A stretch of 64,000 nt of DNA, taken from Heteronotia binoei (taxonomy: Eukaryota). The stretch covers positions 41,540,001 through 41,604,000 of the forward strand of contig NC_083227.1 of assembly GCF_032191835.1 (NCBI RefSeq), read 5' to 3'. Below the pieces are notes generated by a model. That model worked only from the letters and a program-made list of their open reading frames with translations. It made no database searches and was not told the DNA's origin. A program made the position numbers and the translations under genes. Shown piece after piece: positions 120 through 53,414 of this stretch (positions are counted from its first letter, which is position 1; every line of letters starts with the position of its first letter).

Positions 120-2332
120 CTAGTTTATCAAGGAAGAGGCCTGGGCCCCAGAAGGGGCAGGCGAGGGGAAGGACGGATGTTGGAAGCCTCGGGAGGTGAA
201 AGGCAGGGCCCAGGGTAGATCCAGGGAAGGGATGGGGAGGGAGGAGGGAGAAGGAGGGAAGGAAGACAGGGTGGGGAGGGGGCCTGGTGAACCGAAGGAG
301 GCAGAGAAGGCTGAGGCAGGGAGAGGAGCAGCAGGCTTGGGGGTGCCAGCAGCCAGCAGCGAAGCAGGGGCTGTGCCAGTGCCAGCAGAGGCCTTGTCGT
401 TGCTATGGGTGCGCTGGTGGCGGTTGAGGTGGGAGCTGCGGCTGAAGCATTTGCCACAGATGCTGCATTTGTAGGGCTTCTCCCCGGTGTGGGTGCGCTG
501 GTGGATGGTGAGCTCCGAGCGCTGGATGAAGGCTTTGCCACAGTCCCCGCAAGCATAGGGCTTCTCACCCAGGTGGATGCGCTGGTGTTTGATGAGGTTA
601 GAGCTGACGCTGAAGCACTTGCCGCAGGCATCGCAGCGGTACGGCTTCTCGCCAGTGTGCATGCGCCGGTGCTTGGTGAGGTCAGACTTCTGGATGAAGC
701 CCTTTCCACAGTCGGCGCACTTGTAGGGCTTCTCACCCAAGTGGGTGCGCTGGTGCTTCAGCAGGTTGGAACGCACGCTGAAACTTTTGCCGCACTCGTT
801 GCACTTGTAGGGCTTCTCGCCAGTGTGCATGCGCCGGTGTTTGGCCAGTGCCGAGTTCTGGGCAAAGCACTTGCCGCAGTCTATACAAGAGTAGGGCTTC
901 TCACCTGTCTGAGTTCCTTGGTGCCGCACGCCCTCCCCCCCGCCCCTCCCGCACTCACTGCAAGCCGGGCGCCGCCAGAGGAAACTCTTGCCGCAGTCAC
1001 TGCACTTGCAGGGCAGCAAGGTCCCACGCCGGCGTTTTCGCCGCCCGCCCAAGAAACCACAGTCCATGCAACGACAGGGCAGGTGCTCAGCACTCCTGTG
1101 CACCCGCTGGTGCCGCTCCAAGTGGGAGCTCTGTGAGAAGCCCTTACCACAGTCATCGCAGTGGTAGGGCTTGTCACCAGCATGGATGCGCTGGTGCCGG
1201 TCCAGGTGGGAACTCCAAGCAAAGCTCTTCCCACAGTCACTGCAGGTGTAGGGCTTGGCAGAGCCATCGGGGTGGCGGGTGCGCCGGTGCTGAAGCAGGG
1301 CACCGTTCAGCCCAAAGCTCTTGCCACAGTCTTCGCAGACATAGGGTTTCTCTGCAGCGTGGTGCGCACGCCGGTGCTTGGACAGCGCCGCGTTCTTGTT
1401 AAACCCTTTCCCGCAGTCACCACACTGGTAGGGTTTGGTGCTGGCTTTGCTTGCTGGTGTGGTTGTGGAAGCCAGGCAGCACTTGCAAGGAGAAGCCTGG
1501 ATGCTGCCAAAGTGGATGCGCCGGTGGCGGTCGAGGTGAGAACTCCAAGCAAAAGCACGGCCGCAATCCTCACAGACGTAGGGCTTCTCACCGGTGTGGA
1601 TGCGCCGGTGGCGCTCTAAGTGCGAGTTCCAGTTGAAGCCCTTGCCGCACTCGGTGCATTTGTAGGGCTTCTCTTCCAAGTGCTGCTTTTGGTGTTTGAT
1701 GAGGTGGGCAGGAAGGCCAAAGCTCTTGCCACAGACATTGCACTCGCAGGGCCGAGCTGGGCTCGCACTCGTCTTCTTGCCCACGTGACTGCGTTGGTGC
1801 TGGATGAAGGCCGAGCCAACGCTGAAGCTCTTGCCGCACTCGGCGCAGCGGTAGGGCTTGGTGCTGGTGTGGCGCCGCTGGTGGGTCACGAGGGTGGAGT
1901 TGAGGCGGAAGCACTTTCCGCACTCATTGCACTTGTAAGGCTTCTCCAGGCCGCTGCCACTGTGCAGCCGTGAGCGCTTGCCAAAGCCAAAGCCCTTCCC
2001 GCAATCGAGGCATCGCCCGGCATGGCTGAGCAGCCCGTGGTGGCCTCGTGGGGAGAACTTCTTGAAGCCACGGTGAGCAATGGGCTTGCTGGCCTGTTTC
2101 TTCCCCAAGGACTTCTTTGGCTGCTCCTTCAGGGCTGCCTGGCCCTGGCTTTCATTGCTGGCCTTCTCCTTCGACTTCTCCTGCAGAAGGTCCTGTTGGG
2201 TGTCTACTTTCTCCACTGCAATGTTCTCCCCACCGTCTTCTTCTCCTCCTCCATCCTGTGGTGTTGCCACCGCCTCCTCCTCCTCCTCTTCCTCCTCCTC
2301 ATTCCCATTGTTACTCATCATCCCATCATCTG
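120..2332 (-). CDS. ZNF-A terminal exon: acidic N-terminal region, 15 intact C2H2 fingers plus degenerate fingers, and a 94-aa Pro/Ser-rich tail
   Basis: The ORF 120..2321 has CxxC...HxxxH repeats with TGEKPY linkers. The frame stays open to a phase-1 acceptor (minus strand ttctctcattgttccag|CA GAT GAT GGG ATG) at 2332. Stop TAG at 120-122. Confidence 0.95.
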
Positions 2333-4952: not shown

Positions 4953-5027
4953 TAGGTGCCAGTCCTCTTCTCCGGTGAGATTCGGCAAAAGCAGTTATCC
5001 GGGGCCAGCTGATTGCAATTTCCTCTG
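4953..5027 (-). CDS. ZNF-A 75-nt internal exon encoding (A)EEIAISWPRITAFAESHRRRGLAP(T)
   Basis: Acceptor ccatccatag|CA and donor CCT A|gtaagt give a symmetric phase 1-1 exon with an open frame. The peptide is identical over 23 aa to the exon at 39268-39342. Confidence 0.9.
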
Positions 5028-7100: not shown

Positions 7101-7331
7101 ATCTCTACCAATGGTCCATCTTCTCCAGCATCCTGTCTCACACAGAGGCCAACCAGTTCCTTTGTACGGCCAACAACAGGACATAGAGGCCAAGACTTTC
7201 CCTTGATGTTTCCTCCTGGATCTGGGATTTAGAGGATGTGGAGGTTCCCCTCAGTCGCTATAGTTAGTAGCCATTGACAGACCTCTCCAAGAATCTATCT
7301 AATCCCATTTTAAAGCTGTTTATTCCTGTGG
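7101..7331 (-). mobile_element. Old CR1 LINE 3' end, interrupted by the 7332-10598 insertion
   Basis: CR1 3'UTR-like sequence on the minus strand that continues seamlessly at 10599 (ttattcc-tgtgg-acatc). Confidence 0.75.
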
Positions 7332-7597
7332 TAGGGTGGCCAGACCGTCCCGGTCTCCCGGGACATTCCCGGATCTGGCCACCCAATCCCGGATCCCGGG
7401 CTGCCTATACCGGGACCATTAAAGGTCCCGGTTTAGGCAGCCCCGGAGCCGGTGGGCCGCGGGCGCGGGCGGGGAAGGCGGGGAGTGAGGGAGGGAGCGT
7501 CCCTGCGCCTGCGCAGGGCCCCTGCGCACGCGCAGGGACGCTCCCACCCTCACTCCCCGCCTTCCCCGCCCGCGCGCGGGGCCCGGCGGCAGTGGTG

Positions 7598-8270
7598 GAG
7601 GCCTCTCCGTGGCCTCCGCTGGTCGCTGGAAGCCCTCCAGAGACTCTGGAGGGCCTCCAGCGACCAGCGGAGGCCGCGGAGAGGCCGCGGGGCACCCGGC
7701 GCTGGTCCCGGAAGGCCTTCCAGAGCCTCTGGAAGGCCTTCGGGGACCAGCGCCGGCCAGCGAAGGCTTCCCCGCGGCCTCCGCTGGTCCCTGGAGGCCC
7801 TCCAGAGTCTCTGGAGGGCCTCCAGGGACCAGCGGAGGCCGCGGGGAAGCCGCGGGGCACCCGGCGCTGGTCCCGGAAGGCCTTCCAGAGGCTCTGGAAG
7901 GCCTTCCGGGACCAGCGCCGGCCAGCGAAGGCTTCCCCGCGGCCTCCGCTGGTCCCTGGAGGCCCTCCAGAGTCTCTGGAGGGCCTCCAGGGACCAGCGG
8001 AGGCCGCGGGGAAGCCGCGGGGCACCCGGCGCTGGTCCCGGAAGGCCTTCCAGAGCCTCTGGAAGGCCTTCGGGGACCAGCGCCGGCCAGCGAAGGCTTC
8101 CCCGCGGCCTCCGCTGGTCCCTGGAGGCCCTCCAGAGTCTCTGGAGGGCCTCCAGGGACCAGCGGAGGCCGCGGAGCAGCCGGCGCTGGTCCCTGGAGGC
8201 CTCCAGAGGCCAGCGCCGGTAGCGGAGAGGCCCGGCGCTGGTCCCTGGAGGCCTCCAGAGGCCAGCCCCG
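7598..8270. repeat. GC-rich 165-bp tandem repeat (about 3.5 copies); each unit has two palindromes
   Basis: gaaggcttcc recurs at 7762, 7927 and 8092. Confidence 0.9.
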
Positions 8271-8372
8271 GCAGCTCCCTCCCTCCCTCGCCGCGAGGCC
8301 GCCGCCCGAGGACTCCCCGCCGCCGCCGCCGCTGGATCCGCCGCCCTGGAATAAGGTAAGGGGGCCGAAAGC

Positions 8373-8823
8373 NNNNNNNNNNNNNNNNNNNNNNNNNNNN
8401 NNNNNNNNNNNNNNNNNNNNNNNNNNNNNNNNNNNNNNNNNNNNNNNNNNNNNNNNNNNNNNNNNNNNNNNNNNNNNNNNNNNNNNNNNNNNNNNNNNNN
8501 NNNNNNNNNNNNNNNNNNNNNNNNNNNNNNNNNNNNNNNNNNNNNNNNNNNNNNNNNNNNNNNNNNNNNNNNNNNNNNNNNNNNNNNNNNNNNNNNNNNN
8601 NNNNNNNNNNNNNNNNNNNNNNNNNNNNNNNNNNNNNNNNNNNNNNNNNNNNNNNNNNNNNNNNNNNNNNNNNNNNNNNNNNNNNNNNNNNNNNNNNNNN
8701 NNNNNNNNNNNNNNNNNNNNNNNNNNNNNNNNNNNNNNNNNNNNNNNNNNNNNNNNNNNNNNNNNNNNNNNNNNNNNNNNNNNNNNNNNNNNNNNNNNNN
8801 NNNNNNNNNNNNNNNNNNNNNNN
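8373..8823. other. Assembly gap (451 N)
   Basis: Run of n. Confidence 1.
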
Positions 8824-8824
8824 C

Positions 8825-9351
8825 GCAGAGTGTTGGACTGGATGGGCCACTGGCCTGATCCAACAGGGCTTCTCTTATGTTCTTATGTGACGCAGAGTGT
8901 TGGACTGGATGGGCCACTGGCCTGATCCAACAGGGCTTCTCTTATGTTGTTATGTGATGCAGAGTGTTGGACTGGATGGGCCACTGGCCTGATCCAACAG
9001 GGCTTCTCTTATGTTGTTATGTGATGCAGAGTGTTGGACTGGATGGGCCACTGGCCTGATCCAACAGGGCTTCTCTTATGTTGTTATGTGATGCAGAGTG
9101 TTGGACTGGATGGGCCACTGGCCTGATCCAACAGGGCTTCTCTTATGTTGTTATGTGATGCAGAGTGTTGGACTGGATGGGCCACTGGCCTGATCCAACA
9201 GGGCTTCTCTTATGTTGTTATGTGATGCAGAGTGTTGGACTGGATGGGCCACTGGCCTGATCCAACAGGGCTTCTCTTATGTTATTATGTGACGCAGAGT
9301 GTTGGACTGGAGGGGCCACTGGCCTGATCCAACAGGGCTTCTCTTATGTGA
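8825..9351 (+). repeat. 67-bp tandem array (8 visible units) of the CR1 3' terminus
   Basis: Units start at 8825, 8892, 8959, 9026, 9093, 9160, 9227 and 9294 and match the CR1 tail at about 24765-24830. Confidence 0.92.
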
Positions 9352-11613: not shown

Positions 11614-11687
11614 CCAAAGAGATCACATTCTCATAATTTTCCTGCATGTCGTCGCTGGGATCCAGAAGAGTCCACACGCTGCTATGC
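11614..11687 (-). CDS. ZNF-A KRAB-A-derived exon (HSSVWTLLDPSDD-MQENYENVISL); probable start ATG at 11647
   Basis: Acceptor ccttttcctccag|G and donor TTG G|gtaagg. WTLLDPS and MQENYENVISL match the KRAB-A consensus, with the QRALY-type segment missing. Confidence 0.85.
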
Positions 11688-18006: not shown

Positions 18007-18135
18007 GACCTGTCCTCGGCAAGGAACTGGGTTGGTGTCAGATCATGGAGGATGAGTGGCTAGTTGTTGATCCTAACCAGAAGCCTATCTACAGGGAAAC
18101 TCACCAAGAGCCTTGTGAAAGTCTGGTGGCACTCA
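18007..18135 (+). CDS. ZNF-B divergent KRAB-A exon (GPVLGKELGWCQI-MEDEWLVVDPNQKPIYRETHQEPCESLVAL); candidate start ATG at 18045
   Basis: Acceptor cctcttgtttcag|GA, donor CTC A|gtaagt, 129 nt, phase 1-1. EDEWLVVDPNQKPIYRE...ESLVAL aligns with KRAB-A EEWALLDPSQKALYRD...SLVSL. The ATG has good Kozak context (atcATGG). Confidence 0.8.
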
Positions 18136-19155
18136 GTAAGTATCTTTGTCACAGAACATAAGCTGTCAGACCTAAGAGAGGAGCATATAGCAGCTTTCGG
18201 ACAAAATGCTTGCCCTGCTTTGACTGGGCTCTTTTTCCAGTTGTGCCTGCAGTAACTGTCAGTACCAAGAACTGCAATAGGCAGGTGGAGGCTTCTGAAC
18301 ACATAGAGATGTTTATTCACTGTGAACTTTAAAAGCATAGGAACAAAGGGGGGAATATTAACACTTCCATCACTTCTAACAAGAATCTGTACACTAAAAT
18401 GGGTCAGCCATAGCTCTTGTAGGAGTTGTCCTTGAAAGGGTAGCTGCTGTAAGAGCTCTCTCAGCCCCACCTACTTCACAGGGTGTCTGTTGTCGGGGGG
18501 GGGGGGAAGGTAAAGGAGGTTGTGACTGCTCTGTGACTCAGATTCAGAGTATAGGGTGGGATATAAATCCAATATTTTCTTTTTCTAAAAAAGTTTTTTA
18601 TATTAGTCTGGTAAATAAGCTTCTTTCAGCTCTGGACACATTGTACTGTCTGTCAGTTTGCACAGCCAAAACTGAAAATAATATAGACTAATGTTTGCTT
18701 TCATGCAGAATCTAACCGATTTCTCGCTAGCAGTTGCTTTGCCCCTAGGTTTCTGCTTTCCCTGGCTCAAGTGATCAATTCCCCACCAGTTGCTGTGCAG
18801 GTGCATTTTGATCCGCAGCTCCCTCCAATTTCCTTTGCAGCTTCCAGATTTTAAAAAAAAAGAGCAGGAAGCCAGGAGGGGAATTGGATGAAAATGCGCC
18901 CAACTGGTGGGGAATTGATTGCTTGAGCTGGGGAAAGCAGAAGCCCAGGGGTGGAGCAACTGCTAGTGATGAATTGGTCTCAGATGAGGTGACAAATGTT
19001 GCATCCTGACCTCAATCCTCACTGACAGTTTTCTCTTCAATAATGACTACTTTATTCAAGGGGGATCACTGCACTTGAATTCCACAGATAGTGAGCCTAA
19101 CTCCTCAAAGGCCCCCACCTAAAAATAGTACCACTAAGCTTTGTGGGCATCTATC

Positions 19156-20196: not shown

Positions 20197-20850
20197 GAAT
20201 CATATAATCATAGAGTTGGAAAGGACCTCCAGGGTCATCTAGTCCAACCCTCTGCACAATGCAGGAAACTCACAAACACTTCCCCCTAAATTCACAGGAA
20301 CTTCATTGCTGTCAGATGGCCATCTAGCCTCTGTTTAAAAACCTCCAAGGAAGGAGAGCCCACCACCTCCCAAGGAAGCCTGTTCCACTGAGGAATTGCT
20401 CTAACTGTCAGGAAGTTCTTCCTAATGTTGAGCCGGAACCTCTTTTGATTTAATTTCAACCCATTGGTTCTGGTCCTACCTTCCGGGGCCAAAGAAAACA
20501 ATTCCATACCATCCTCTGTATGACAGCCCTTCAAGTACTTGAAGATGGTGATCATATCACCTCTCAGCTGCTTCCTCTCCAGGCTAACCATTCCCAGCTC
20601 CTTCAGCCTTTCCTCATAGGACTTGGTCTCCAGACCCCTCATCATCTTCGTCGCCTCCTCTGGACCTGTTCCAGCTTGTCTATATCCTTCTTAAAATGTG
20701 GTGGCCAAAACTGAACACAATACTCCAGGTGAGTCTTACCAGAGCAGAGTAAAGCAATACCATCACATCACGTGATCTGGACACTATACTTCTGTTGATA
20801 CAGCCCAAAATTGCATTTGCCTTTTTAGCCACCGCATCACACTGTTGACT
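20197..20850 (-). mobile_element. 5'-truncated CR1 LINE (different subfamily)
   Basis: The minus ORF 20292..20645 is the CR1 ORF2 C-terminus; typical 3' tail at about 20200. Confidence 0.88.
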
Positions 20851-23012
20851 CAGGAAGAGGGGGGATAAAACAGACAATATAAAAAAACCCCTACTCTGCT
20901 GGGCTTACGTGGGGCATTTTAAATTGAAATGCAGAAGTGAGAGGGAACTGAAATTGATATCTTAATGGCTGGGCTCTGCTGTGCTATTTCCAGGACCAAT
21001 ATTCAAGTAAATATTTTTAATTCTCATTTACTCTGTGGACTGGAAGATGCTTTGAGGTAGCCAGAGCTATATGTAAATCTTAGATTACTATGCAGAGACA
21101 GGCACTTACTTGAGCTTAGTTAATGTGTAAAGGCACACCTGATTTCCTTACATTGGTTATTGTAATCATGACAGTTGACTGCTCAATAGATGAACAAGCT
21201 TCATTGAACATCATTGCATTGGTGGCCTGGTGTCATGAAAGTTATATCCCTGGGCTTAGATATGAGATGGCCCATTCACACATGTAAATCCTTGGGGTAA
21301 GGTGGTGGCTCAGCAGTAGAGCATCTGCTTTGCATGCAGAAGGTTCTGGGTTCAATCCTGGGCAGCTCCTGCTTAAAGATTGGCTTGCAGGTAACGAGAC
21401 TGCAGAAAGCTGATTCCAGTCAAGAGCAGACAATGCTGACCTTGATGGACTAAGGGTCTGACTCAGTAGAAGGCAACTTCTTGAGTTGATTTGTTCAACA
21501 CTGATGTGCGAAGTAGCCTCTTTGGAGTTTTCACGCAGGAACTGACAACTTGGAACCAAAGGTCACATTCAATTTGGCGTATTCTTTGGCCTAGGAGGCC
21601 AAAGAAAAGCAAGAGTAGCGTATGCAGGCAAGACAAATTAAAACAGATTGCATATCTGCACATATTTGAGCAAGTATTTAATACTGAAGAGCTGGAGCCC
21701 AGTAACATCTTTAAGACAAAGTTTCATTATTAAAGGTATAAGCTTTTGTGTGTACACGCACACTTCTTCAGATACAAGGAAATGAAATTGTTGTCCCTGC
21801 TTTCTCTCAGACTATCTACAGGGGCGTCAAACTCATTTGTTATGAGGGCCGGATCTCACATAAATGAGACCTTGTTGGGCCAGGCCATGTCGAGTTGGGC
21901 CATGTTGGGCCAGTCCATGTGCGTACCTATTTAAGATTAGGTGGAAGAGATATAAACTTTATAAAAGACACAAACATAATTAAATATTTTTTTAGAAAAA
22001 CGTAAAAATATGCTTAAAACATTAGCATTTGTTGGTCTTAAAGGTGCTTTCTTTGTATTTCTCCCATAGGATCCAAGGAACTGGGCAAAGGAAGCTCTGG
22101 CTCTTTCCTTCCTTCACCAAGGAATGAGGGGGAGGAGTCTCAGCCAGTAGAAGGAAGAGAGGCTTGGCTCAGTAGCTCTGCTGTGTGATTGAGAGAGTCT
22201 GGCAAAGCAAGCTGTCTCTCCTCCCCTTCCTCCCCAAGGGGAGAGCCTCAGCCAATGGAGAAAATGTAGGTTTTCTCTGTAGTTCCTGTGCTATTGAGCA
22301 AGCCTTGCAAAGCAAGCTGTGATGCAGAAGGAAGCAAGAGAGAGGGAGAAGGAAGCAGATGACAGCCAGTTGCTCGGGGGCCTGATAGGAGCCTTCCATA
22401 GGCCTGATTTGGCCCCCAGGCCACATGTTTGACACCCCTGGTCTACATCATGTTATATGCTAATTAATTATAGCCAGCCAGTTTGGTGTAGTCATTAAGT
22501 GCACAGATTCTCATCTGAGAGAACTGGGTTTGATTCCCCACTCCTCCAGTTGCAGCTGCTGGAATGGCCTTGGGTCAGCCATAGCTATTGCAGAGCTGTC
22601 CTTGAAAGGGCAGCTTCTCAGCCCCACCTACTTCTAAGGTGTCTTTTGGTGAGGGGAGGGAGAGAAAGGAGATTGTAGGTCACTCTGAGATTTTAGAGTA
22701 TAGGGTGGGGTATAACCAATATCAATATCTTCTAATTTGCTTTTCAACCCTGTCTAAGTTTGAATGGTTTTCTCCCATTTCATTGTATCTGAAGAAGTGT
22801 GTGTATACACACAAAAGCTTATACCTTTAATAATAAAACTTTGTCTTAAAGGTGCTACTGGACTTCAGACCAATACTCACCTGGATCTATCCTGGGGAGC
22901 TGTAAGATTGGTGGTGGAAACAGTCACAAAAGATGGGTAAAGGAAGCATGGCTAGAACAAGACCCAGCAAGCCTTTGAGATTTCCTGTTTGTTTGTTTCT
23001 TTCTCCAAGCAG

Positions 23013-23117
23013 GATCTTCAAGTTCTGAATCCAATGAGATTTTCCTTGTGGAAGATGATGAAGAACCTTGCATCCCAGAGCCCGGAAGAAGGGAGAACCC
23101 AAGAAGAGCCAATATGG
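23013..23117 (+). CDS. ZNF-B KRAB-B-like exon (SSSSESNEIFLVEDDEEPCIPEPGRRENPRRANM)
   Basis: Polypyrimidine acceptor ttctccaagcag|GA, donor ATG G|gtgagg, 105 nt, phase 1-1. LVEDDEEPCIPE resembles KRAB-B LEQGEEPWxPD. Confidence 0.75.
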
Positions 23118-23649
23118 GTGAGGAGCAGATCTCAGCTGTTTAGGCCAAGAATGCTAGAGAGGTGTAGAGGTCAGAGCATCAGACTAGGAAGACCTGCATT
23201 CAGATCCTCACTCAGCCATGCAAATCATTGGCTGACTAACAGGCAGAAGGCTGTTTGGCCCCTGAGAGGTAGAACAGCCACTCAGCTGTTTCACACCTGA
23301 ACCAATGGGAGTGCTGCTCTAGCATCCAGTCTTCTTTCAGAAGGGTGATGGGATGTTGGAGCACAGCAACTGGAAGTTGAGGGCTGCCTGAGGGATCATT
23401 TAGACAGAGAAGTCTTATAGCAAGGGAGCAGGCAATTTCCTGCATAGCTCTGCCTGGTAGTGCAGCAGACTGGTTTAACTCAATCTCTGGGTGAGGATAG
23501 AGTTGTGAAGCCTGGCTCTGGTGATGAATAGACCTGATAACTACAAGCTTTAAAAAGAATTGACCACATACTCTGTATATTGATAAATCTTCTTTGTTGT
23601 TTTATAAACCTCCCGCTTTGGTAATCTCTGTACCCTTCAGGCTCAAAGT

Positions 23650-24830
23650 TTACCTTGACTTCCAGAAAGCTTTTGATAAAGTTCCTCATCAAAGGCTCCT
23701 TAGAAAGCTCGAGACTCATGGAGTAAAAGGACAGGTCCTCTTGTGGATCAAAAACTGGCTAATTAATAGGAAGCAGAGAGTGAGTATAAATGGGCAGTCT
23801 TCGCAGTGGAGGATGGTAAACTGTGGGGTGCCGCAGGGCTCAGTACTGGGTCCCATCCTCTTTAACTTGTTCATAAATGATTTGGAGTTGGGAGTGAGCA
23901 GTGAAGTGGCCGAGTTTGCAGATGACACTAAATTGTTCAGGGTGGTGAGAACCAGAGAGGATTGTGAGGCACTCCAAAGGGATCTGTTGAGGCTGGGTGA
24001 GTGGGCGTCAACGTGGCAGATGAGGTTCAGTGTGGCCAAGTGCAAAGTAATGCACATTGGGACCAAGAATCTCAGCTACAAATACAAGTTGATGGGGTGT
24101 GAACTGGCAGAGATTGACCAAGAGAGAGATCTTGGGGTTGTGGTAGATAACTCACTGAAAATGTCAAGACAGTGTGCGATTGCAATAAAAAAGGCCAACA
24201 CCATGCTGGGAATTATTAGGAAGGGAACTGAAAACAAATCAGCCAGTATCATAATGCCCCTGTATAAATCGATGGTGCAGTCTCATTTGGAATACTGTGT
24301 GCAATTCTGGTCACCGCACCTCCAAAAGGATATTATAGCATTGGAAAAAGTCCAGAAAAGGGCAACTAGAAAGATTAAAGGTTTGGAACACTTTCCCTAT
24401 GAAGAAAGGTTAAAACGCTTAGGGCTCTTTAGCTTGGAGAAACGTTGGCTGCGGGGTGACATGATAGAGGTTTACAAGATAATGCATGGGATGGAGAAAG
24501 TAGAGAAAGAAGTACTTTTCTCCCTTTCTCACAATACAAGAACTCGTGGGCATTCAATGAAATTGCTGAGCAGTCAGGTTAAAACGGATAAAAAGAAGTA
24601 CTTCTTCACCCAAAGGGTCATTAACATGTCGTGGCGGCTACAAGCATAGAAATATGGAGCAGAGGTCCATCAGTGGCTATTAGCCACAGTGCGTATATAT
24701 ATATGTGTGTATGTGTGTGTGTGTATATATATACATATATAAATTTTTTTTTGGCCACTGTGTGACACAGAGTGTTGGACTGGATGGGCCATTGGCCTGA
24801 TCCAACATGGCTTCTCTTATGTTCTTAATG
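23650..24830 (+). mobile_element. 5'-truncated CR1 LINE with RT fragment and 3' tail
   Basis: ORF 23594..24649 contains GVPQGSVLGP and FADD motifs; tail cttctcttatgttctt. Confidence 0.95.
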
Positions 24831-25660: not shown

Positions 25661-26396
25661 TCCTTCAGTTGGCTGAGGCTCCTCCCCCTCCTGGTCCTCT
25701 GGGGAAGGAAGGAAAGAGCCAGAGCTCCCTTTGCCCAGTTCTGTGGATCACATGAGAGAGATACAAAGAAACACCTTTAAAACCAATGAGTGTTAATCTT
25801 TAATTGTGTATGTCTGTGTCCTTTATAAAGTTCATATCTCTGCTTCCTAATCTTAAATAGGTACACAGATGGCCTAGCCCAACATAGTCTGGCCCGACAA
25901 GGTCTCATTTATGTCAGATTCTGCCCTCATAACAAATGAGTTCGACATCCCTGAGTATATTGTCCTGAACTCCTCAGAAGAAGAGCAGGGTAAAATGTGA
26001 CAGACATCCACAGAATGATTGGATTATTTTCATTATGCAGTCCACCTAAGCTTGAAGTATATGCTCTCTTCCCACTTTATCAGATCCATGTCTACTGCGA
26101 GCATACATATATTCCCTTGGGCATAGAAATGGATGTCTTGAGAATTTTCTTGAGAACTTCATTCCACATCTGCCATAGAAATGAGTGTCTTCAGAATTTT
26201 AACTTACACAGTTCTGGGAGGAACCATGAGGCCTAAAAGCAGAAGTCTCAAATTAGGAAGAAATTAACCAGAACTTTTATACCATAATTATATACCATAT
26301 ACCTCAGTAAATATATGTCCTACCATCCGTTTGTTGCTGGCACTTTCAGTTCAGAGGTGATCATTTGCAGTGAATTGTCATGTCTGTGTCTTCTAG

Positions 26397-27928
26397 CAGG
26401 TGAAGGACTGGGTAGCGAGGAGGAGGAGGAGAGCGAGGAGGAAGATGTTCAACAGCGGGACGGTCCTAAGGTGGTACAGCTGGATGCCAGCATGGTTTCT
26501 GGGGAATGTAAGAGCCTTCGCTGGAGGGTGGTGCAGCAGGTTGGCAGCGGTGGCAAGGTACTGGCAGGAGAGGGGCCGCCCATCATGGTTCTGCAGAAAG
26601 GATACGAGTGCGAGGACTGCGGGAAGGTGTTCAGTTGCAGCTCGCACTACAGCAAGCACCGGCGCACACACACGGGGGAGCGCCCCTTCCGTTGCGGAGA
26701 GTGCGGCAAGAGCTTCAATGTCAGCTCCAACCTGTACAGGCACCAGAGGGCCCACGCCAATGCTAACGCTGCCCCAGTCACTCCCACAGCCTCCCTGATG
26801 CCCTCCCGTGGCCTGCCTTACCAGTGTGCTGACTGTGGCCAGTGCTTCCGCCGCAACACAGAGCTGGTAACGCACCAGCGGCTTCACACCGGTCGCCTGC
26901 CTTTCCAATGCAGCGACTGTGGCAAGAGCTTTTCGTGGAGTTCACACTTTGCCCGGCATCTGCGGATCCACACTGGGGAGAAGCCCTACCCGTGCAACGA
27001 GTGCGGCAAGCGCTTCAGCCGCAGCTCCCATCTCTACCGGCACCAGCGCACCCATGGCACCAATGCTGCTGCTAACGTCACCCGTGCCTACATCTGCACT
27101 TACTGCGGGCGCAGTTTCAGCACCACACTGCACTTCGACCAGCACCAGCGGACCCACCGTGGCCGCAAACCCTACAAGTGCACCCTCTGTGGCAAGGCTT
27201 TTGCTGATGGTTTAGCCTTGGTGAAACACCAACGTTTGCACTTAATGGGTGGAGATCAACACCACCAGTGTTCAGAGTGTGGGCAAAGCTTTGGAGGGCG
27301 GTCGCAGCTGGCTCGCCACCGTCGGCTCCATGGCACTGCTGACAAGCCCTACGGGTGTGGCGAGTGCGGGCAAAGCTTTGGTGCTCGAACCCAGTTGGCC
27401 CAGCACCGACGCCTGCACATTTCTGCTGACAAGCCATATCACTGTGGAGAGTGTGGGCTGAGCTTCACATGGAGCTCACATTGGGAACGGCATCGGCGCA
27501 TTCATACTGGGGAAAGACCGTATTCTTGTGGGGACTGTGGAAAGCGCTTTGGGCGCACCTCTCACCTCTACAGGCACCAGCGCACCCATGCTGGCGGCCA
27601 GCCTCATGTCTGTCCGGACTGCGGTAAGAGCTTCAACAGCACCTTGCACTTCCAGCGTCACCAGCACGCCCACCACCTCGACTCAGATGGTGCTCAACTC
27701 TCTGCCCACACTTGCAGGGACTGTGGCAAGCCCTGCACTGATGCATCAGCCCTGCTTAAGCACCAGTGCATGCATACAGATGACAGGCCATATCCTTGCC
27801 CCCAATGTGGGCGCCGCTTTCGTGGCACTGCGTATCTCTACAGGCACTTACGCAGCCATGCTCACCAGGTGGAAGAGACTATGCTCATACCAACGTCTAG
27901 AAAGTGTGAGGATATTGTACCATGCTAA
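26397..27928 (+). CDS. ZNF-B terminal exon, 14 C2H2 fingers
   Basis: ORF 26315..27928 carries the C2H2 array. Acceptor tgtcttctag|CA GGT (tandem alternative at 26400). Stop TAA at 27926-27928. Confidence 0.95.
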
Positions 27929-34919: not shown

Positions 34920-35145
34920 TGGAGATAAGGTCCATCAGTGGCTATTAGCCACAGCTTATTGTTGAAACTCTGTCTGGGGCAGTGATGCTCTGTATTCTTG
35001 TGCTTGGGGGGGGGCACAGTGGAAGGGCTTCTAGCTCCACTGGAGGACCTCTTGATGGCACTTGGGTTTTCTGGCCACTGTGTGACACAGAGTGTTGGAC
35101 TGGATGGGCCACTGGCCTGATCCAACATGGCTTCTCATGTTCTTA
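34920..35145 (+). mobile_element. CR1 3'UTR fragment
   Basis: aggtccatcagtggctattagccacag...gtgtgacacagagtgttggactggatgggcc tail. Confidence 0.85.
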
Positions 35146-35439
35146 ATACCTGGAGATTGTGAAGCTGGAGCCTGAGGAGGGCAGGGTTTGAGGAGGGAGG
35201 GACTTCAATGAGTCCACCTTCCAAAGCGGCCATTTTCTCCATGTAAACTGATCTCCATCTCCTGGAAATCAGTGGTAATCCCGGGAGATCTCCAGGCACT
35301 ACCTGGAGGCTGGCATTACTATTACCTGGACACATCTTTTTATCTCCTATACCATCCACCCATTTTCTTTCAGTGAACGTCCAACCTGATGAAGAGGTCT
35401 ATAGAACTCAAAAACTTGCTCGCTGTCTGGGTTGGTGAT

Positions 35440-38071: not shown

Positions 38072-38199
38072 TTCTGCCACGTGGTTCAGAGTCGAGGACG
38101 CTTGTCATTTCACAAGTCAGCAACTTTACAGAAGTACTTTTGTGCATCTCCCTGAGAGTGACATCATGCAAGAGAACTATGAGAATGTGATCTCATTGG
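38072..38199 (+). CDS. ZNF-C KRAB-A-derived exon; probable start ATG at 38166 (MQENYENVISL)
   Basis: Acceptor ctctctctgcag|T and donor TTG G|gtaaga. The 128-nt length is close to the usual 127-nt KRAB-A exon, but only the last 11 codons keep the KRAB consensus. Confidence 0.85.
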
Positions 38200-39267
38200 G
38201 TAAGAATGCATTTTTACCATATATCAGAATGTATTGGTACTAGCACAGGCTTAAGTTAGAGGGGTTTATGGCAAACAAATCCTCCTCTTTTGAATTTGTG
38301 TGTAACAATCAGGAGTGGTCTTTTTCTGAATTCAGATCCCCCCCCCACTTCTCTGGGAACAATTGTTACCCAATCAGTCCTCATGCCAGTCTGTCATATG
38401 CAGAGTGTCCTTTAGAGGTTTAGAACTCAGTTGAAAAACTGAAGATTGTCCAAGTCTAGAGTATTCACCAATCTCAACTTGAGACAACAACCCTGTTCAA
38501 AAGGGAAGGATCAGAAGAGAGACAGATACTTAATGAACAAGTAAACTTCAGATTAAAATCTGGTGGTAGAAAGTGCCATCAGCTCACAGCTGACTTAAGC
38601 CAACCCGTAAGGTTTTCAAGGCAAGAGAGGTTGTTTGCTATTGTCTGTCTGCATGGTGACCCTGGACTTCTTTGGTGGTCTCCAAATACTAACCAGGGCT
38701 GACTCTGATTAGCATCCAAAATCTGATGAGATTGGGCTAGCCTGGGCTATCCAGGTCAAGACAGAGATCAAGAGCTGGGAGGTGAAATATCAGAAAAGCA
38801 AATGAACAATACAACAGTTTGTATCTGGTCTCAGCAAACTGGGTAGGATTGGATGCCATAGCACCTACTATGAGGAGAGTGGCTGGCAATGGGGTAAGCT
38901 GACTTGGAACTGGGATGGGGAAACAGACTCTGGGGGAAAAGGGTGCAAAAGAAATCCCATTGCTTGCCCTGAAGAGAAGGCTCTGGGGCTGTTGAGTTGG
39001 TGGCATGAGAACCAGTGACAAGGAAGGTTTCCCATCAACACCAAACAGTTGGCTTCTAGGACTGTCCTCCATGACCTTTGCTCCTTACAAGTTGAGATCC
39101 CCATATAACTGGAAGGCAGCCTATCTTAACAGAAGCTTAATATTCTAAGCTCTGTGTAAAACCATATCAATGTGATGTCACATTTCTTCCCCAAAAGATA
39201 AAGTGGCTCTTTTATGCCTATGCACTGCCCAGGTCCTCATAGCTTTTCTTCTAACTTGCATCCTCAG

Positions 39268-39342
39268 CGGAGGAGATTGCAATCAGCTGGCCCAGGATAA
39301 CTGCTTTTGCTGAGTCCCACAGAAGGAGAGGTCTGATGTCTG
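39268..39342 (+). CDS. ZNF-C 75-nt exon encoding (A)EEIAISWPRITAFAESHRRRGLMS(D)
   Basis: Acceptor gcatcctcag|CG, donor TCT G|gtaagt, phase 1-1; paralog of 4953-5027. Confidence 0.9.
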
Positions 39343-39399
39343 GTAAGTTAGCATGGGAAGGAGAGCTGCATTCCCCCAATCCGAGGCACACAGTGCCTA

Positions 39400-40863: not shown

Positions 40864-41094
40864 ACACGGAGCCTGAACAAGGCCCAGTGGAACAGGCCCC
40901 CATGCAGGACCCAGTTGTGGCGGGTCCAAGTGAAGGTGGAATAAACGCTGATCTGCGGCGGCAGCTGGGCCTCATCCTGCAGACTGCTGGCAGGAGCCAG
41001 GTGGAGAAGATGCTGCGGGAGCTGGTGAAAGAACAGAGCCAGGATGGGAAGCGCAGACCTCGGAAGAAGGTGCTCAGGAGCCCCAAAAACGAAG
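40864..41094 (+). CDS. ZNF-C-specific 231-nt exon (DTEPEQGPVEQ...LRRQLGLILQTAGRSQVEKMLRELVKEQSQDGKRRPRKK...)
   Basis: Acceptor ttctgtggtgcag|AC, donor GAA G|gtgggc, symmetric phase 1-1, open frame with coding-like GC content in an AT-rich intron. Confidence 0.7.
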
Positions 41095-44857: not shown

Positions 44858-46770
44858 TTACAGTTGCTGACGAGAACGAAGAAGAGCTACAGGCAGAAGA
44901 GGACAGCTCAGCGAAGGTGGAGCCACCAGGTACCCAACTAGGGACATCTGATGGCCAGGGTGAGGGTAACACCAATGACAGCCAAGGCCACCTCAGCTCA
45001 GAAGAACACCAGCTGCTACAGGTGCCGACTGTACATCAGAGGGAGAGGAAGACATCCAGAAAGCTAAAAGACCAGCCTGCAGCTCCAGCTGCAGCAGAAA
45101 GACCAGGGGTCTGCATAGAGTGTGGGAAGAAGAACTTGGGTGGTAGTGGGCGAGGCCACAGTGAACCCACACCGGACAGACCGCATCAGTGTGCCGAGTG
45201 TGGACGTTGCTTCCGGCAGCGCTCCATCTTGGCTAAACACCAAAAGATCCACACAGGCGAGAAACCCTATCCGTGCACGGCCTGTGGCAAACGGTTCAAC
45301 CGTAGCTCCAACCTGGCACAACACCAGCGTGTGCACACAGGGGAGCGCCCCTTCCCCTGTGCTGCCTGCGGCAAGGCCTTCACCCAAAAATCAGACCTGG
45401 AGCGGCATCAGCGCGTGCACACAGGGGAACGGCCATACTCCTGCCAAGACTGTGGCAAGCGCTTCTCTGTCAGCTCCCACCTTGACCGGCACAGACGCAC
45501 GCACCAACACAATCCCCAAGAAGAACCCCCTGCTGCTGCCCCAGCCCCATCTGCTCACTGCTGCCCCGACTGTGGGAAGTGTTTTGGCCAGCGCTCGGCA
45601 CTCTCCAAGCACCGTAAGACTCATTCCGGTGAGCGCCCTTTCCCATGCAGTGCCTGTGGCAAGCGTTTCAGTCGCAGCTCCAACTTGGCACAGCACCAGC
45701 GTATTCACACTGGCGAGCGCCCATTCCCCTGTAGCGACTGTGGCAAACGGTTCATCCAGCGCTCTGACCTGGAACGCCACCAGCGTGTGCACACTGGTGA
45801 GCGCCCCTACACCTGCGCTCAGTGCGGCCGGGGCTTCTCAGTGAGTTCTCATCTTGACCGGCACCAGAGAGTCCACCAAGCCCAGGCTGCTGCAGCTGCC
45901 GCACACCGCTGCCCCGAGCATGTGAAGGGCTTCCTCCTCAGCACTGGGGGCAAACAGCTTCTCAAACACCAGCTGTACAGCAGCAAGGGGCGCCTCACGC
46001 GCAGCGGCCACTGCTTGGACTGCGGCAAGAGCCTGGGCAAAGTCCCGCTGCAGTTGCCGGCGCCCCCTGTTGAGAAGCCTTTCAAGTGCCAGGACTGTGG
46101 GAAAGCTTTTGCCCAGCGGTCGGCCTTGGTTAAGCACCAGCGCATCCACACAGGGGAGAAGCCGTTCTCCTGCATGGACTGTGGCAAGGCGTTCATTCAG
46201 AAATCAGACTTGACCATCCACCAGCGCATGCACACCGGCGAGAAGCCGTACCGCTGTGACACCTGCGGCAAGTGCTTCAGTGTCAGCTCCAACTTGCTGA
46301 CTCACCAGCGCACCCACTTGGGCGAGAAGCCCTACGCGTGCGGGGACTGCGGCAAGGCCTTCATCCAGCGCTCAGAGCTCACCATCCACCAGCGCACCCA
46401 CACCGGGGAGAAGCCCTACAAGTGCAGCATCTGCGGTAAATGCTTCAGCCGCAGCTCCCACCTCAACCGCCACCAGCGCACCCATAGCAACGACAAGGCC
46501 TCTGCCGGCACTGGCCTGGCCCCTGCTTCGCTGCTGACTGTCGGCACCCCCAAACCTGTCGCTTCTCTTTCCGCTTCATCCTTCTCTGCTTCCTACCCCT
46601 CACCCAACCCTCTTCCAACCTTGCCTTCCTTCCCCTCCTCTCCATCATCCCTCCCCATCCCTTCCTTGGACCTGCCCTGGTCTCTCGCCTTTCCATCCCG
46701 GGGCTTTTCTCATCCATCTTTCGCTTCTCCTGCTCCAGGCAGTGCTCAGACTTCATCCCTAATAAACTAG
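44858..46770 (+). CDS. ZNF-C terminal exon, 13 intact C2H2 fingers plus a 94-aa Pro/Ser-rich tail paralogous to ZNF-A
   Basis: ORF 44917..46770 extends in frame to the acceptor catctcag|TT ACA at 44858. Stop TAG at 46768-46770. Confidence 0.95.
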
Positions 46771-50886: not shown

Positions 50887-52011
50887 CTCCAGCAAACGAA
50901 CTGCAGCATTTTAGTGGGTATGGAAGAAAGAGGAAATACAGCCTTTTCAGGGGCATGGAAAATAATTAATTATAACCGTACATGTGAACATGAAGGCACT
51001 TGCACATAAACCCACGTACCTTGTATAGCTATTATCACAGAGCTGTCAAAGAGTAGTGGTACCTTAGAAGATTTTTATTGCAGTATAGATCTCACTTTAT
51101 GAGCGGTATAGAGGCTGCATACATAAAAATGTCTCCTACAGATGCAACTTCCTGCATCTACTGAAGTGAGCTATGACTCACAAAAGCTTGTGCTGGAATA
51201 AATTTTGTTAGTCTTTAAGGTGTCACTGGATTGCTATTTAATTTAGCTTCAATAGTCTAATACAGCTACTCCTCTGAAATTATTATCATGTGAAGTAAAT
51301 GTTAGTGTAGGACCAAGACTAGAGAGACTGGAGTTTAAATCCTTGATCAGCTATAAAAATTGCTGGATGACTTTGGGCCAGTTAACTTCCTCTCAGTCCA
51401 GCCTTCCACACAGGGCTGTTGTAAGGGGGGGAAACAGGAGGGAGAACCATATCACCTGCCCTAAACCCTTTGAAAAGACAGCAGGATTAAAATCAAGGTG
51501 TCTCCCTTGCCAGGTAAGTATAGCAGGATTAAAATGTGATAGTTGCTTGTTAATGTGATACTATTAGTTATTATTACTGCTGTGATATGTCATAGCAACT
51601 GAATGCGAAAGATAAGTAGGCCAAGCAACATCCAGTATTTTAAATACAGCCTCCTGTGTTTAAAATACAGCCTCCTTTTCTTCTAGAGTCAGACTAAATG
51701 ACATTCTGGCATCTCGGCTGCTGGACTGAGAATATTGCACCCTCCTAGTTTTATTCTGCTTTGTTTCCCAAAAGTTACATGCTAGGCCCCTATGCAAATC
51801 CTTGCCTCCCACACCCGCCCCACCAGCGTGAACATGAAAGTTAAACTGAGTATCCTCCCCTGACTGGTTGTACTTGTGTTAACATGTTGTTTTTGTGGTA
51901 TCCCACACCCAGGTAGGCTGCTGGGATCTCTGCAATGTCGACATAGTCACACTTTTATGGAGGCGAGCTGCACGGAGGCCAGCTCCACGGTGCTGTTTGC
52001 TCGGAGCCGTC

Positions 52012-52196
52012 ATGGCCCCGTCCCTAGCCCTCACCAACTTTATTCTGTTCTTCATCGGAGCCGTGCTCCTCTATCAATACAGCAACACTTTTCGATATTA
52101 TTTTCGGGTTTGTTTTTTAATTGGCTGGATGCTGGGCATGTCCCTCCTCGTGCTTCCTGTTGTGGCTCTCCAAGGAAGAAATGTGGCAAATATGAG
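52012..52196 (+). CDS. AGPAT1: AGPAT1-like (1-acyl-sn-glycerol-3-phosphate acyltransferase) coding exon 1
   Basis: Kozak gccgtcATGG. MAPSL...GWMLGMSLLVLPVVALQGRNVANM resembles human AGPAT1 GWILFLAVLAIPVCAVRGRNVENM. Donor AG|gtaagt, phase 2. Confidence 0.88.
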
Positions 52197-53280: not shown

Positions 53281-53414
53281 AGTCCTCCGTTTCGTAATGT
53301 TGCCTTTGAAATACATTCTTGGCATTAGGATCAGCGTACAGGATGCTATGAACTTAAACCTGGAAGGGCCATATGTCATGGTTGCCAATCATCAGAGCAA
53401 CGTGGACTATCTTG
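53281..53414 (+). CDS. AGPAT1: AGPAT1-like exon 2, motif I (NHQSNVD)
   Basis: ttattttag|A ... CTT G|gtaggt, 134 nt; contains the HxxxxD catalytic motif. Confidence 0.92.

What the first reader, a model, noticed from the sequence alone, without database searches (positions are those of the whole stretch)
4953..5027. Unrecognised 75-nt exon under strict purifying selection in two inverted ZNF paralogs
Seen: exons 5027-4953 (ZNF-A, minus) and 39268-39342 (ZNF-C, plus) are both 75 nt, phase 1-1, and encode the identical peptide AEEIAISWPRITAFAESHRRRGL. Adding the preceding 11 codons gives 34 identical residues with 14 synonymous and 0 non-synonymous nucleotide differences (hand count), while the flanking introns show no similarity. 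The exon sits where KRAB-B normally is but lacks the KRAB-B consensus (KPDxIxxLEQGEEPW). Inference: a conserved short effector module (aromatic/amphipathic segment followed by a basic RRR patch), possibly undescribed. Both exons are missed by the ORF track because they are under 60 codons.
Basis: partly seen in the sequence, partly recalled or inferred. Interest (0 to 1): 0.88.

Follow-up and report, generated by a model that had tools for sequence, protein, structure and literature searches.

The report
Conserved reptile/bird zinc-finger N-terminal exon
The 75-base exon is real and extremely conserved, and it encodes most of a 34-residue N-terminal helix shared by a reptile-and-bird zinc-finger gene family that grew out of a truncated KRAB box; gene models in related species already include it, but I found no domain, structure or paper that describes it.

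Summary
Both exons (5027-4953 minus, 39268-39342 plus) are 75 nt, AG/GT-flanked and phase 1-1. Over 34 codons the two copies differ by 14 synonymous and 0 non-synonymous changes (pS 0.64).

The exon is not unrecognised in public data. Annotated gene models from squamates, a turtle, alligator and birds carry the same peptide. In seven further genomic copies from six species it is again exactly 75 nt, with 21 of 23 third codon positions variable.

The "preceding 11 codons" begin at the initiator Met. The unit is therefore a 34-residue N-terminal module, MQENYENVISL + AEEIAISWPRITAFAESHRRRGL. Its first 11 residues are the tail of a KRAB-A box (sub-threshold Pfam match, same exon end and phase as the true KRAB-A of the neighbouring ZNF-B).

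The exon shows no significant similarity to KRAB-B, and one gecko paralog carries both. Pfam, PDB sequence and fold searches found nothing. A profile search of 1.84 billion proteins found about two dozen family clusters, and every named one is sauropsid. AlphaFold predicts one long helix.

My best reading is a partner-binding effector helix of a KAP1-independent variant KRAB. That function is inferred, not shown. It is a moderately interesting new variant of a known kind.

The parts
4953..5027 (-). ZNF-A coding exon 2 (75 nt, phase 1-1); encodes residues 12-36, AEEIAISWPRITAFAESHRRRGLAP
   Evidence: AG acceptor and GTAAGT donor. Peptide identical to orthologs in gecko, turtle and birds.
39268..39342 (+). 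ZNF-C coding exon 2 (75 nt, phase 1-1); encodes AEEIAISWPRITAFAESHRRRGLMS
   Evidence: Differs from the Gekko japonicus ortholog at 1 of the 69 compared nt.
11614..11687 (-). ZNF-A upstream exon. ATG at 11647; the coding part 11647-11614 gives MQENYENVISL plus a split codon, which is the tail of a KRAB-A box.
   Evidence: Pfam KRAB 16.6 bits, E 0.006, profile positions 29-41 of 42, below the 20.4-bit cut-off.
38072..38199 (+). ZNF-C upstream exon (128 nt, close to the canonical 127-nt KRAB-A exon). ATG at 38166; the coding part 38166-38199 gives MQENYENVISL.
   Evidence: Pfam KRAB 15.9 bits, profile positions 29-41 of 42. The exon part upstream of the ATG has no significant KRAB match.
40864..41094 (+). 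ZNF-C coding exon 3: acidic/Gln-rich linker, predicted helix-turn-helix (DLRRQLGLILQTAGRSQVEKMLRELVKEQ) and basic KRRPRKK patch. ZNF-A has no counterpart.
   Evidence: tblastn 86% to P0001; spliced ORF intact; AlphaFold helices 62-78 and 80-99 with pLDDT about 90; no Pfam match.
44864..46770 (+). ZNF-C last exon: C2H2 finger array plus conserved C-terminal tail
   Evidence: The acceptor was chosen to match the gecko models (...NE|VADENEE).
120..2332 (-). ZNF-A last exon: acidic stretch, C2H2 array and conserved tail. An alternative in-frame acceptor at 2380 would add 16 codons ([16 protein letters not shown]).
   Evidence: Bird orthologs splice directly before DDGLLS, equivalent to 2332. The Sphaerodactylus model P0046 uses the upstream site.
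18046..18137 (+). Comparator: coding part of ZNF-B exon 1, an N-terminally truncated but genuine KRAB-A that ends in phase 1 at the same position as the ZNF-A and ZNF-C exons
   Evidence: Pfam KRAB 22.6 bits, above the 20.4 cut-off, profile positions 13-41 of 42; sequence.
23010..23117 (+). Comparator: ZNF-B KRAB-B-like exon (108 nt, phase 1-1), occupying the slot that the 75-nt exon occupies in ZNF-A and ZNF-C
   Evidence: Similar to the KRAB-B of P0055 (p = 0.001 against shuffles) whereas the 75-nt exon is not.

Best explanation
The 75-nt exon is the second coding exon of two ancient paralogous C2H2 zinc-finger genes: ZNF-A on the minus strand and ZNF-C on the plus strand. They belong to a conserved three-gene cluster of a gekkotan lizard, next to an acyltransferase gene. 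In relatives the cluster sits beside genes that lie in the human MHC region (that human location is recalled, not tested here).

Together with the last 11 codons of the preceding exon, it encodes the protein's N-terminal 34 residues, MQENYENVISL|AEEIAISWPRITAFAESHRRRGL.

Shown:
- The exon is real, symmetric (phase 1-1) and exactly 75 nt in squamates, a turtle and birds.
- Its peptide is nearly invariant while synonymous sites are saturated.
- The module defines a family whose named members are all sauropsid, with at least three paralog lineages.
- The preceding 11 residues are the tail of a KRAB-A box whose N-terminal three quarters are no longer translated.

Inferred:
- The 34 residues form one long helix that extends what is left of KRAB-A helix alpha3.
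- This helix acts as a short, portable protein-binding (effector-recruiting) module of these transcription factors.
- It most likely does not act through KAP1/TRIM28, because the alpha1, alpha2 and early alpha3 contact segments of KRAB-A are missing.

The partner and the sign of the effect (repression or activation) are unknown.

My confidence by step: about 0.97 that it is a real, constrained coding exon; about 0.8 that it sits in a KRAB-derived context; about 0.5 that it is a partner-binding effector helix independent of KAP1.
For: - Exon anatomy and selection.
- Nine genomic copies in total (two in the window, seven in Gekko, Melopsittacus x2, Spheniscus, Platysternon, Tiliqua and Struthio) are all 75 nt with AG...GTAAG.
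- Among A-type and C-type copies there are 0 non-synonymous changes, except in the second budgerigar copy, which carries one L-to-M replacement (nd 1-2 in its pairs). pS is 0.4-1.16, and 21 of 23 third positions vary against 3 of 23 second positions.
- 33 annotated proteins contain the module, and most start at its Met.
- The profile search of 1.84e9 proteins returned 27 hits; two are unrelated repeat proteins, and every named one among the rest is sauropsid.
- KRAB context: Pfam KRAB positions 29-41 match at E 0.006-0.01. The neighbouring ZNF-B has an above-threshold KRAB-A whose exon ends at the same residue and phase.
- AlphaFold2 on the family alignment predicts helix 3-31, with pLDDT 95 over residues 11-20.
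- Portability: the A-type genes and two lacertid Tigger-transposase fusion models carry only the 34 residues, without the downstream helix-turn-helix exon.
- From the KRAB-KAP1 structure paper (PMC9753469): KAP1 contacts come only from KRAB-A residues 3-44 (alpha1 6-9, alpha2 15-20, alpha3 23-43).
- From PMC6745500: old variant KRABs are under purifying selection, mostly do not bind KAP1 and have other interactors.
Against: - There is no functional, expression or interaction data.
- The model is a bare helix (pTM 0.29) with no fold match.
- The amphipathic moment is not significant.
- The KRAB-A assignment rests on 11-13 residues scoring below Pfam's cut-off, plus positional homology.
- An ostrich isoform model skips the exon in frame (P0044) and the ostrich copy is the most diverged, so the exon is not indispensable in every lineage.
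- Absence from mammals and amphibians is inferred from protein databases only, not from genome searches.
Confidence: 0.55

Rival explanations
1. The exon is simply a highly diverged KRAB-B box, homologous to the KRAB-B exon, that keeps KRAB-B's accessory role.
For: It has the same position directly after the KRAB-A exon and the same 1-1 phase as the KRAB-B-like exon of ZNF-B. By eye there is a loose [IL]-S-x-P-x-[IL] resemblance.
Against: Local alignment to two KRAB-B sequences is no better than shuffles (p 0.36-0.57), while those two KRAB-B sequences match each other at p = 0.001. The Sphaerodactylus model P0055 has the module followed by a canonical KRAB-B, GFPLSKPDLLSWMDRGEDLW. That KRAB-B exon is independently seen in gecko contigs. 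An old tandem duplication of the KRAB-B exon cannot be excluded.
Confidence: 0.15
2. The helix is a self-association or hetero-association interface between the paralogous zinc-finger proteins, analogous in role to SCAN or DUF3669, rather than a cofactor-recruiting module.
For: Three paralog lineages keep nearly the same helix. Hydrophobic residues recur at i, i+3/4, i+7 spacing (Y5, V8/I9, A12, I15, W19, I22, A26). DUF3669 in other old KRAB-ZNFs oligomerises (PMC6923878, abstract listed).
Against: No test was possible with these tools because they fold single chains only. The predicted helix carries a central proline. There is no Pfam SCAN or DUF3669 match.
Confidence: 0.2
3. The module is a minimal KRAB that still recruits KAP1/TRIM28 through the retained end of alpha3, extended by the new exon.
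For: The retained MxENYxNxxSL is part of KRAB-A alpha3, which lies on the KAP1 coiled coil. The exon prolongs that helix.
Against: Alpha1, alpha2 and the first half of alpha3 are not encoded, since the protein starts at about profile position 31 of 42. Ancient variant KRABs generally fail to bind KAP1 (PMC6745500).
Confidence: 0.1
4. The conserved N-terminus is a stability or localisation signal (an N-terminal degron, or a nuclear/nucleolar signal using the HRRR patch) rather than an effector.
For: It is at the extreme N-terminus and contains a basic HRRRG patch.
Against: The invariance extends over about 30 residues including many acidic and hydrophobic positions, far more than such signals need. 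ZNF-C has a separate, stronger basic KRRPRKK patch. In group ii the basic patch is the least conserved part of the module (TRGRRG, PPRRLS).
Confidence: 0.08
5. The similarity is a chance match or a conserved non-coding element (an enhancer or RNA element) and not a protein-coding exon.
For: None found.
Against: All 14 differences are synonymous. Third positions are saturated across species while the peptide is fixed. Splice sites and the 75-nt length are conserved in nine copies. The spliced ORFs are intact, at 748 and 773 or 789 codons.
Confidence: 0.01

Closest known systems
Variant (ancient, non-canonical) KRAB domains of old KRAB zinc-finger proteins, as defined in PMC6745500
   Same: An N-terminal module of a poly-C2H2 protein. 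It derives from a KRAB-A exon (same exon end and phase, Pfam KRAB positions 29-41). It is old, under purifying selection, and probably not a KAP1 binder.
   Different: Only the last 11 or so residues of KRAB-A are translated. The bulk of the module is a separate 75-nt exon with no detectable KRAB-A or KRAB-B similarity. Every named family member is sauropsid. It scores below the Pfam threshold.
KRAB-B box (accessory subdomain, separate phase 1-1 exon after KRAB-A)
   Same: The same slot and the same exon phase. Both are short, with 25 residues here against 20-25 for KRAB-B.
   Different: There is no significant sequence similarity. It is basic at its C-terminal end where KRAB-B is acidic. It co-occurs with a true KRAB-B in P0055. 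It is far more conserved than KRAB-B, which tolerates mutation (PMC9753469).
Host-transposase fusion genes with KRAB N-termini (bioRxiv 10.1101/2020.05.07.082677)
   Same: In Podarcis and Zootoca the 34-residue module is spliced onto a Tigger/Pogo transposase ORF in annotated isoform models. This is the same architecture as KRAB-transposase fusions.
   Different: The captured N-terminal part here is the truncated KRAB tail plus the new exon, not a full KRAB. These fusions are known only from gene models.
DUF3669 and SCAN: extra N-terminal modules of old vertebrate KRAB/C2H2 families
   Same: A lineage-conserved helical add-on next to a KRAB in an ancient ZNF subfamily, possibly an interaction surface.
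   Different: There is no sequence match. It is much shorter (one helix), and it lies after rather than before the KRAB-A remnant.

Membership tests
KRAB box (Pfam PF01352, KRAB-A) | Whole-protein score at or above Pfam's gathering cut-off (20.4 bits) | tested here: not met
   15.9 and 16.6 bits for the spliced N-termini of ZNF-C and ZNF-A. Only profile positions 29-41 of 42 align. Orthologs score 11-14 bits. The neighbouring ZNF-B passes at 22.6 bits.
KRAB box (Pfam PF01352, KRAB-A) | N-terminal KAP1-contact segments (alpha1, alpha2, first half of alpha3) are present in the protein | tested here: not met
   The conserved coding sequence starts at the Met that aligns to about profile position 31. 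The segment definitions come from PMC9753469.
KRAB box (Pfam PF01352, KRAB-A) | Encoded by its own exon that ends in phase 1 just after the ...SL motif | tested here: met
   The exons end at 11614 and 38199 with ...VISL plus one base, the same as ZNF-B's ...VAL plus one base at 18137. The ZNF-C exon is 128 nt. The canonical exon length of 127 nt is from my own knowledge.
KRAB box (Pfam PF01352, KRAB-A) | Binds KAP1/TRIM28 and represses transcription when tethered | not testable with these tools
   This needs binding and reporter assays.
KRAB-B box | Sequence consensus around KPDxIxxLExGEEPW | tested here: not met
   Smith-Waterman scores against the KRAB-B of P0055 and the KRAB-B-like exon of the ZNF-B type give p = 0.36-0.57 against shuffles.
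KRAB-B box | A separate phase 1-1 exon immediately downstream of the KRAB-A exon | tested here: met
   75 nt, phase 1-1, and the next coding exon after the KRAB-A remnant.
KRAB-B box | Mutually exclusive with another KRAB-B in the same protein (expected if it is the KRAB-B) | tested here: not met
   P0055 carries the module and then a canonical KRAB-B. This rests on a single gene model.
Poly-C2H2 zinc-finger transcription factor | Tandem C2H2 fingers with TGEKP-type linkers in the same ORF | tested here: met
   The last-exon ORFs 120-2321(-) and 44917-46770(+) show such arrays. Orthologs carry precomputed zf-C2H2 and zf-H2C2_2 hits. The spliced ORFs are intact.
Unnamed sauropsid ZNF family with the N-terminal MQE[NS]YE.VISL-AEEIAISWPRITAF module | The 34-residue module at the N-terminus, split over two exons with a 75-nt second exon | tested here: met
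   The window copies are identical to the family consensus. Exon size and phase are identical in seven other genomic copies.

The most novel reading that the evidence does not exclude
The 34-residue helix would be a previously undescribed, sauropsid-specific transcriptional effector domain. It would have replaced KAP1 recruitment in an ancient zinc-finger cluster that lies beside MHC-region genes in relatives. It would recruit a different cofactor, perhaps another coiled-coil or TRIM-type protein. It would be portable enough to have been co-opted by a Tigger transposase fusion gene in lacertid lizards.
Probability: 0.3. Interest if true: 0.65.

Novelty: new variant of a known kind. Interest (0 to 1): 0.45.

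Why it matters
KRAB zinc-finger biology is built almost entirely on mammalian KAP1-recruiting KRABs. Here a KRAB-A box has been cut down to its last 11 residues and welded to a new 25-residue exon. The resulting helix has then stayed essentially unchanged across squamates, a turtle, a crocodilian and birds, a span I recall as roughly 280 million years, and in at least three paralog lineages. It is more constrained than the zinc fingers of the same genes.

That degree of constraint on so short a peptide implies a specific and still unknown binding partner. The peptide is small enough to synthesise for pull-down experiments or to tether in reporter assays. It could show what non-mammalian KRAB-derived zinc-finger proteins do when they do not use KAP1.

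The result is also a practical reminder that short symmetric exons carrying the key functional module are invisible to ORF-length filters.

Tried and rejected
- Pfam scans of the spliced N-termini and of six orthologous N-terminal regions gave only the sub-threshold KRAB tail. Nothing matched the exon or the downstream helix-turn-helix module.
- PDB sequence searches with the family profile and with P0055 gave no relevant hit.
- Foldseek of the AlphaFold model against the PDB gave 0 matches, as expected for a bare helix with pTM 0.29.
- The hypothesis that the exon is a diverged KRAB-B looked plausible by eye but failed the shuffle test.
- The amphipathic-helix claim failed too: the hydrophobic moment is not significant.
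- I read the in-frame sequence upstream of the ATGs (WTLLDP in ZNF-A, FRVEDACHFTSQQ in ZNF-C) as a possible decayed KRAB-A. Pfam gives it no support, so I treat it only as a hint.
- The collinear block 12118-12014 versus 35211-35315 is full of stop codons and looks like a dispersed repeat, not an exon.
- The hits P0053 and P0054 from the profile search are large, repetitive, unrelated proteins and are chance matches.
- The look-up of encoding contigs failed or found nothing for P0001 and P0055, so the genomic structure of the 'module + KRAB-B' paralog could not be checked. A search with P0055 recovered only its KRAB-B exon in short gecko contigs.
- A possible link to the chicken MHC-B 'Bzfp' genes was only checked in the literature and could not be tested.
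- No vertebrate genome collection was available for tblastn, so absence outside sauropsids rests on protein databases.

Full report
**1. The observation**

The exons at 5027-4953 (minus) and 39268-39342 (plus) are each 75 nt. Each is preceded by a pyrimidine tract and AG and followed by GTAAGT. Both read in phase 1-1 and encode AEEIAISWPRITAFAESHRRRGL, followed by AP or MS. They differ at 15 of 75 bases.

The upstream exons end at 11614 (minus) and 38199 (plus) with MQENYENVISL plus one G. A Nei-Gojobori count over the 34 shared codons gives 14.0 synonymous and 0.0 non-synonymous differences (S=22, N=80, pS=0.64). The chance that 14 neutral changes are all synonymous is about 5e-10. The last 240 codons of the same two genes have pN=0.13 and pS=0.46, so this N-terminus is the most constrained part of the pair.

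A blastn comparison of the two gene regions aligns only 5036-4947 with 39259-39348. That is the exon and its splice signals, and the introns do not align. No third copy exists in the window.

**2. Gene context in the window**

The window carries three C2H2 zinc-finger genes. Their spliced ORFs are intact.
- ZNF-A (minus): 11647-11614, 5027-4953, then 2332 or 2380 to 120. This gives 773 or 789 codons.
- ZNF-C (plus): 38166-38199, 39268-39342, 40864-41094, 44864-46770. This gives 748 codons.
- ZNF-B (plus) lies between them: 18046-18137, 23010-23117, and a last-exon ORF at 26315-27928.

The window is collinear with a Gekko japonicus scaffold at about 85% nucleotide identity, so it comes from a gekkotan lizard. 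In both, an acyltransferase gene follows ZNF-C.

In the budgerigar the same arrangement, A(-) B(+) C(+), is packed into 14 kb next to DDR1. A Cariama model fuses the A-type gene to GABBR1. From my own knowledge, DDR1, GABBR1 and AGPAT1 lie in the human MHC region, so the cluster looks MHC-linked and older than the bird-lizard split.

**3. The exon is already in public gene models**

A search with the conserved C-terminal tail of ZNF-A found Sphaerodactylus and Gekko proteins that contain the identical peptide. A search with the N-terminal region found 33 proteins from squamates, alligator and birds. All have generic names such as ZNF345-like, ZNF135-like, ZNF260-like or ZNF2-like.

Most models begin exactly at the Met of MQE[NS]YE.VISL. 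Where a model extends further upstream, the extra sequence is not conserved. This explains why the similarity between ZNF-A and ZNF-C stops there, since upstream is 5'UTR.

There are at least three lineages.
- A-type: the module runs straight into the acidic stretch and the fingers.
- C-type: the module is followed by an exon with a predicted helix-turn-helix and a KRRxRKK patch.
- 'Group ii': found at another locus, with TETRGRRGL instead of AESHRRRGL.

A-type and C-type copies both occur in squamates and in birds. Group ii occurs in squamates, in alligator and in birds.

**4. Conservation across species**

I fetched genomic loci for six more species. In seven further copies (Gekko, Melopsittacus twice, Spheniscus, Platysternon, Tiliqua, Struthio) the exon is again exactly 75 nt between AG and GTAAG.

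Over the 23 codons, 21 third positions vary against 3 second positions. Among A-type and C-type copies, pairwise pS is 0.4-1.16 with no amino-acid change, except in the second budgerigar copy, which carries one L-to-M replacement.

The ostrich group-ii copy is the most diverged, and an ostrich isoform model skips the exon in frame.

**5. How far the family reaches**

A profile of the N-terminal region (alignment A1) was searched against 1.84 billion representative proteins. It found only 27 hits. Two are unrelated repetitive proteins. Every named protein among the rest is sauropsid: geckos, iguanians, snakes, a turtle, alligator, penguins, a manakin and ostrich. No mammal or amphibian protein appeared. 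This is protein-database evidence only, because no vertebrate genome collection could be searched.

**6. Relation to KRAB**

Pfam finds only a sub-threshold KRAB match. It covers DIMQENYENVISL against profile positions 29-41 of 42, at 15.9-16.6 bits against a cut-off of 20.4.

The neighbouring ZNF-B gives independent support. Its first coding exon scores above the Pfam KRAB threshold (22.6 bits, positions 13-41). That exon also starts translation inside the KRAB-A exon. It ends one base after ...VAL, the same place and phase as ...VISL plus G in ZNF-A and ZNF-C. ZNF-B then has a 108-nt phase 1-1 KRAB-B-like exon. So the 75-nt exon sits in the KRAB-B slot.

It is nevertheless not detectably KRAB-B. 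Local alignments to two KRAB-B sequences are no better than shuffles (p 0.36-0.57), while those two match each other at p=0.001.

A Sphaerodactylus paralog model (P0055) reads MQGNYETLISL-EEMAISLPRITALAESHRRGLAS-GFPLSKPDLLSWMDRGEDLW. That is the module followed by a canonical KRAB-B. Its KRAB-B exon is seen independently in gecko contigs. I could not retrieve that locus, so the 'extra cassette' reading rests on one model. An old duplication of the KRAB-B exon cannot be excluded.

**7. Structure and likely mechanism**

AlphaFold2 on the family alignment predicts one continuous helix over residues 3-31 (pLDDT 95 for residues 11-20). This is followed by a disordered linker and a helix-turn-helix at 62-99 (mean pLDDT 70.7, pTM 0.29). 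There is no PDB sequence or fold match. The hydrophobic moment is not significantly above shuffles (p 0.06-0.24), so 'amphipathic' is only descriptive.

According to the KRAB-KAP1 structure paper, all KAP1 contacts come from KRAB-A residues 3-44 (alpha1 6-9, alpha2 15-20, alpha3 23-43), and KRAB-B is disordered (PMC9753469). Here only the end of alpha3 is translated.

Old variant KRABs are reported to be under purifying selection, to bind KAP1 poorly and to have other interactors (PMC6745500).

I therefore infer that the 34 residues form a short partner-binding effector helix that probably works without KAP1. This step is inference. The rivals are self-association, residual KAP1 binding and a stability or localisation signal.

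The module appears without the helix-turn-helix exon in A-type genes. It is also spliced onto a full Tigger transposase in two lacertids, in models 87% identical over 612 residues. This architecture is like the KRAB-transposase fusions described in bioRxiv 10.1101/2020.05.07.082677, and it suggests that the module functions on its own.

**8. Novelty and verdict**

The exon itself is known to annotation pipelines. The module is not in Pfam or the PDB, and my literature searches found no description of it.

It is best filed as a new variant of a known kind: a variant, truncated KRAB N-terminus with an added conserved cassette exon in a family whose named members are all sauropsid. It fails the membership tests for KRAB-A (score and N-terminal segments) and for KRAB-B (consensus), while sharing their exon logic.

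Interest is moderate. The constraint is striking and the peptide is easy to test, but the function is unknown and the setting, a zinc-finger effector module, is familiar.

The N run at 8373-8823 was left untouched.

Noticed in passing
P0031 (Podarcis raffonei) and P0032 (Zootoca vivipara); module homologous to window 11647-11614 + 5027-4953: Two lacertid 'tigger transposable element-derived protein 1-like isoform X3' models splice the 34-residue module onto a full-length Tigger/Pogo transposase (PF03221, PF03184). The two are 87% identical over 612 residues, which suggests a conserved host-transposase fusion gene.
   Followed up: partly
window 40864-41094 (+): The third coding exon of ZNF-C encodes a predicted helix-turn-helix (DLRRQLGLILQTAGRSQVEKMLRELVKEQ) plus a KRRPRKK patch. 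It is conserved in squamates, a turtle, alligator and birds, has no Pfam match, and is absent from ZNF-A.
   Followed up: partly
window 18046-18137 (+) and 23010-23117 (+): ZNF-B also starts translation inside its KRAB-A exon (MEDEWLVVDP...; Pfam KRAB positions 13-41, above threshold). It is followed by a 108-nt KRAB-B-like exon. The cluster therefore shows graded N-terminal truncation of KRAB-A: position 13 in ZNF-B, about position 31 in ZNF-A and ZNF-C.
   Followed up: partly
A Sphaerodactylus model (P0046) uses the upstream acceptor, while bird orthologs use the downstream one. Which is used here is unresolved.
   Followed up: partly
window about 51600-55400 (+); L001 28795-34072; L002 19599-24037: An acyltransferase (AGPAT-like, weak PF01553 hit) lies downstream of ZNF-C, as in Gekko japonicus. 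The budgerigar cluster lies next to DDR1, and a Cariama model fuses the A-type gene to GABBR1. Together these point to MHC linkage of the cluster.
   Followed up: partly
window 7599-8182 and 8825-9349, flanking the N run 8373-8823; also 35081-35145: Inside the large ZNF-A intron there are GC-rich tandem arrays on both sides of the assembly gap: a 165-nt unit x3.5 and a 67-nt unit x7.8. One copy of the 67-nt unit also lies upstream of ZNF-C. The long 'ORFs' at 7274-8925 are artefacts of these repeats.
   Followed up: no
window 23594-24649 (+), 62454-63047 (+), 20292-20645 (-): The two plus-strand ORFs hit reverse transcriptase (RVT_1). I read these and the unscanned minus-strand ORF as CR1-like LINE fragments. 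One lies in the ZNF-B intron directly after its KRAB-B-like exon.
   Followed up: no
window 120-404 (-) and 46486-46770 (+): A 94-residue Pro/Ser-rich tail follows the last finger (...SLDLPW...SSLIN). It is shared by ZNF-A, ZNF-C and their gecko orthologs (72-74% identity; pN 0.13 between the paralogs). It has no known domain.
   Followed up: partly
P0044 (Struthio camelus) versus L006 6487-6561: An ostrich isoform model skips the 75-nt exon in frame (...SVISL|DVDMEPP...). The ostrich copy of the exon is also the most diverged, which suggests relaxed constraint or cassette use in that lineage.
   Followed up: no
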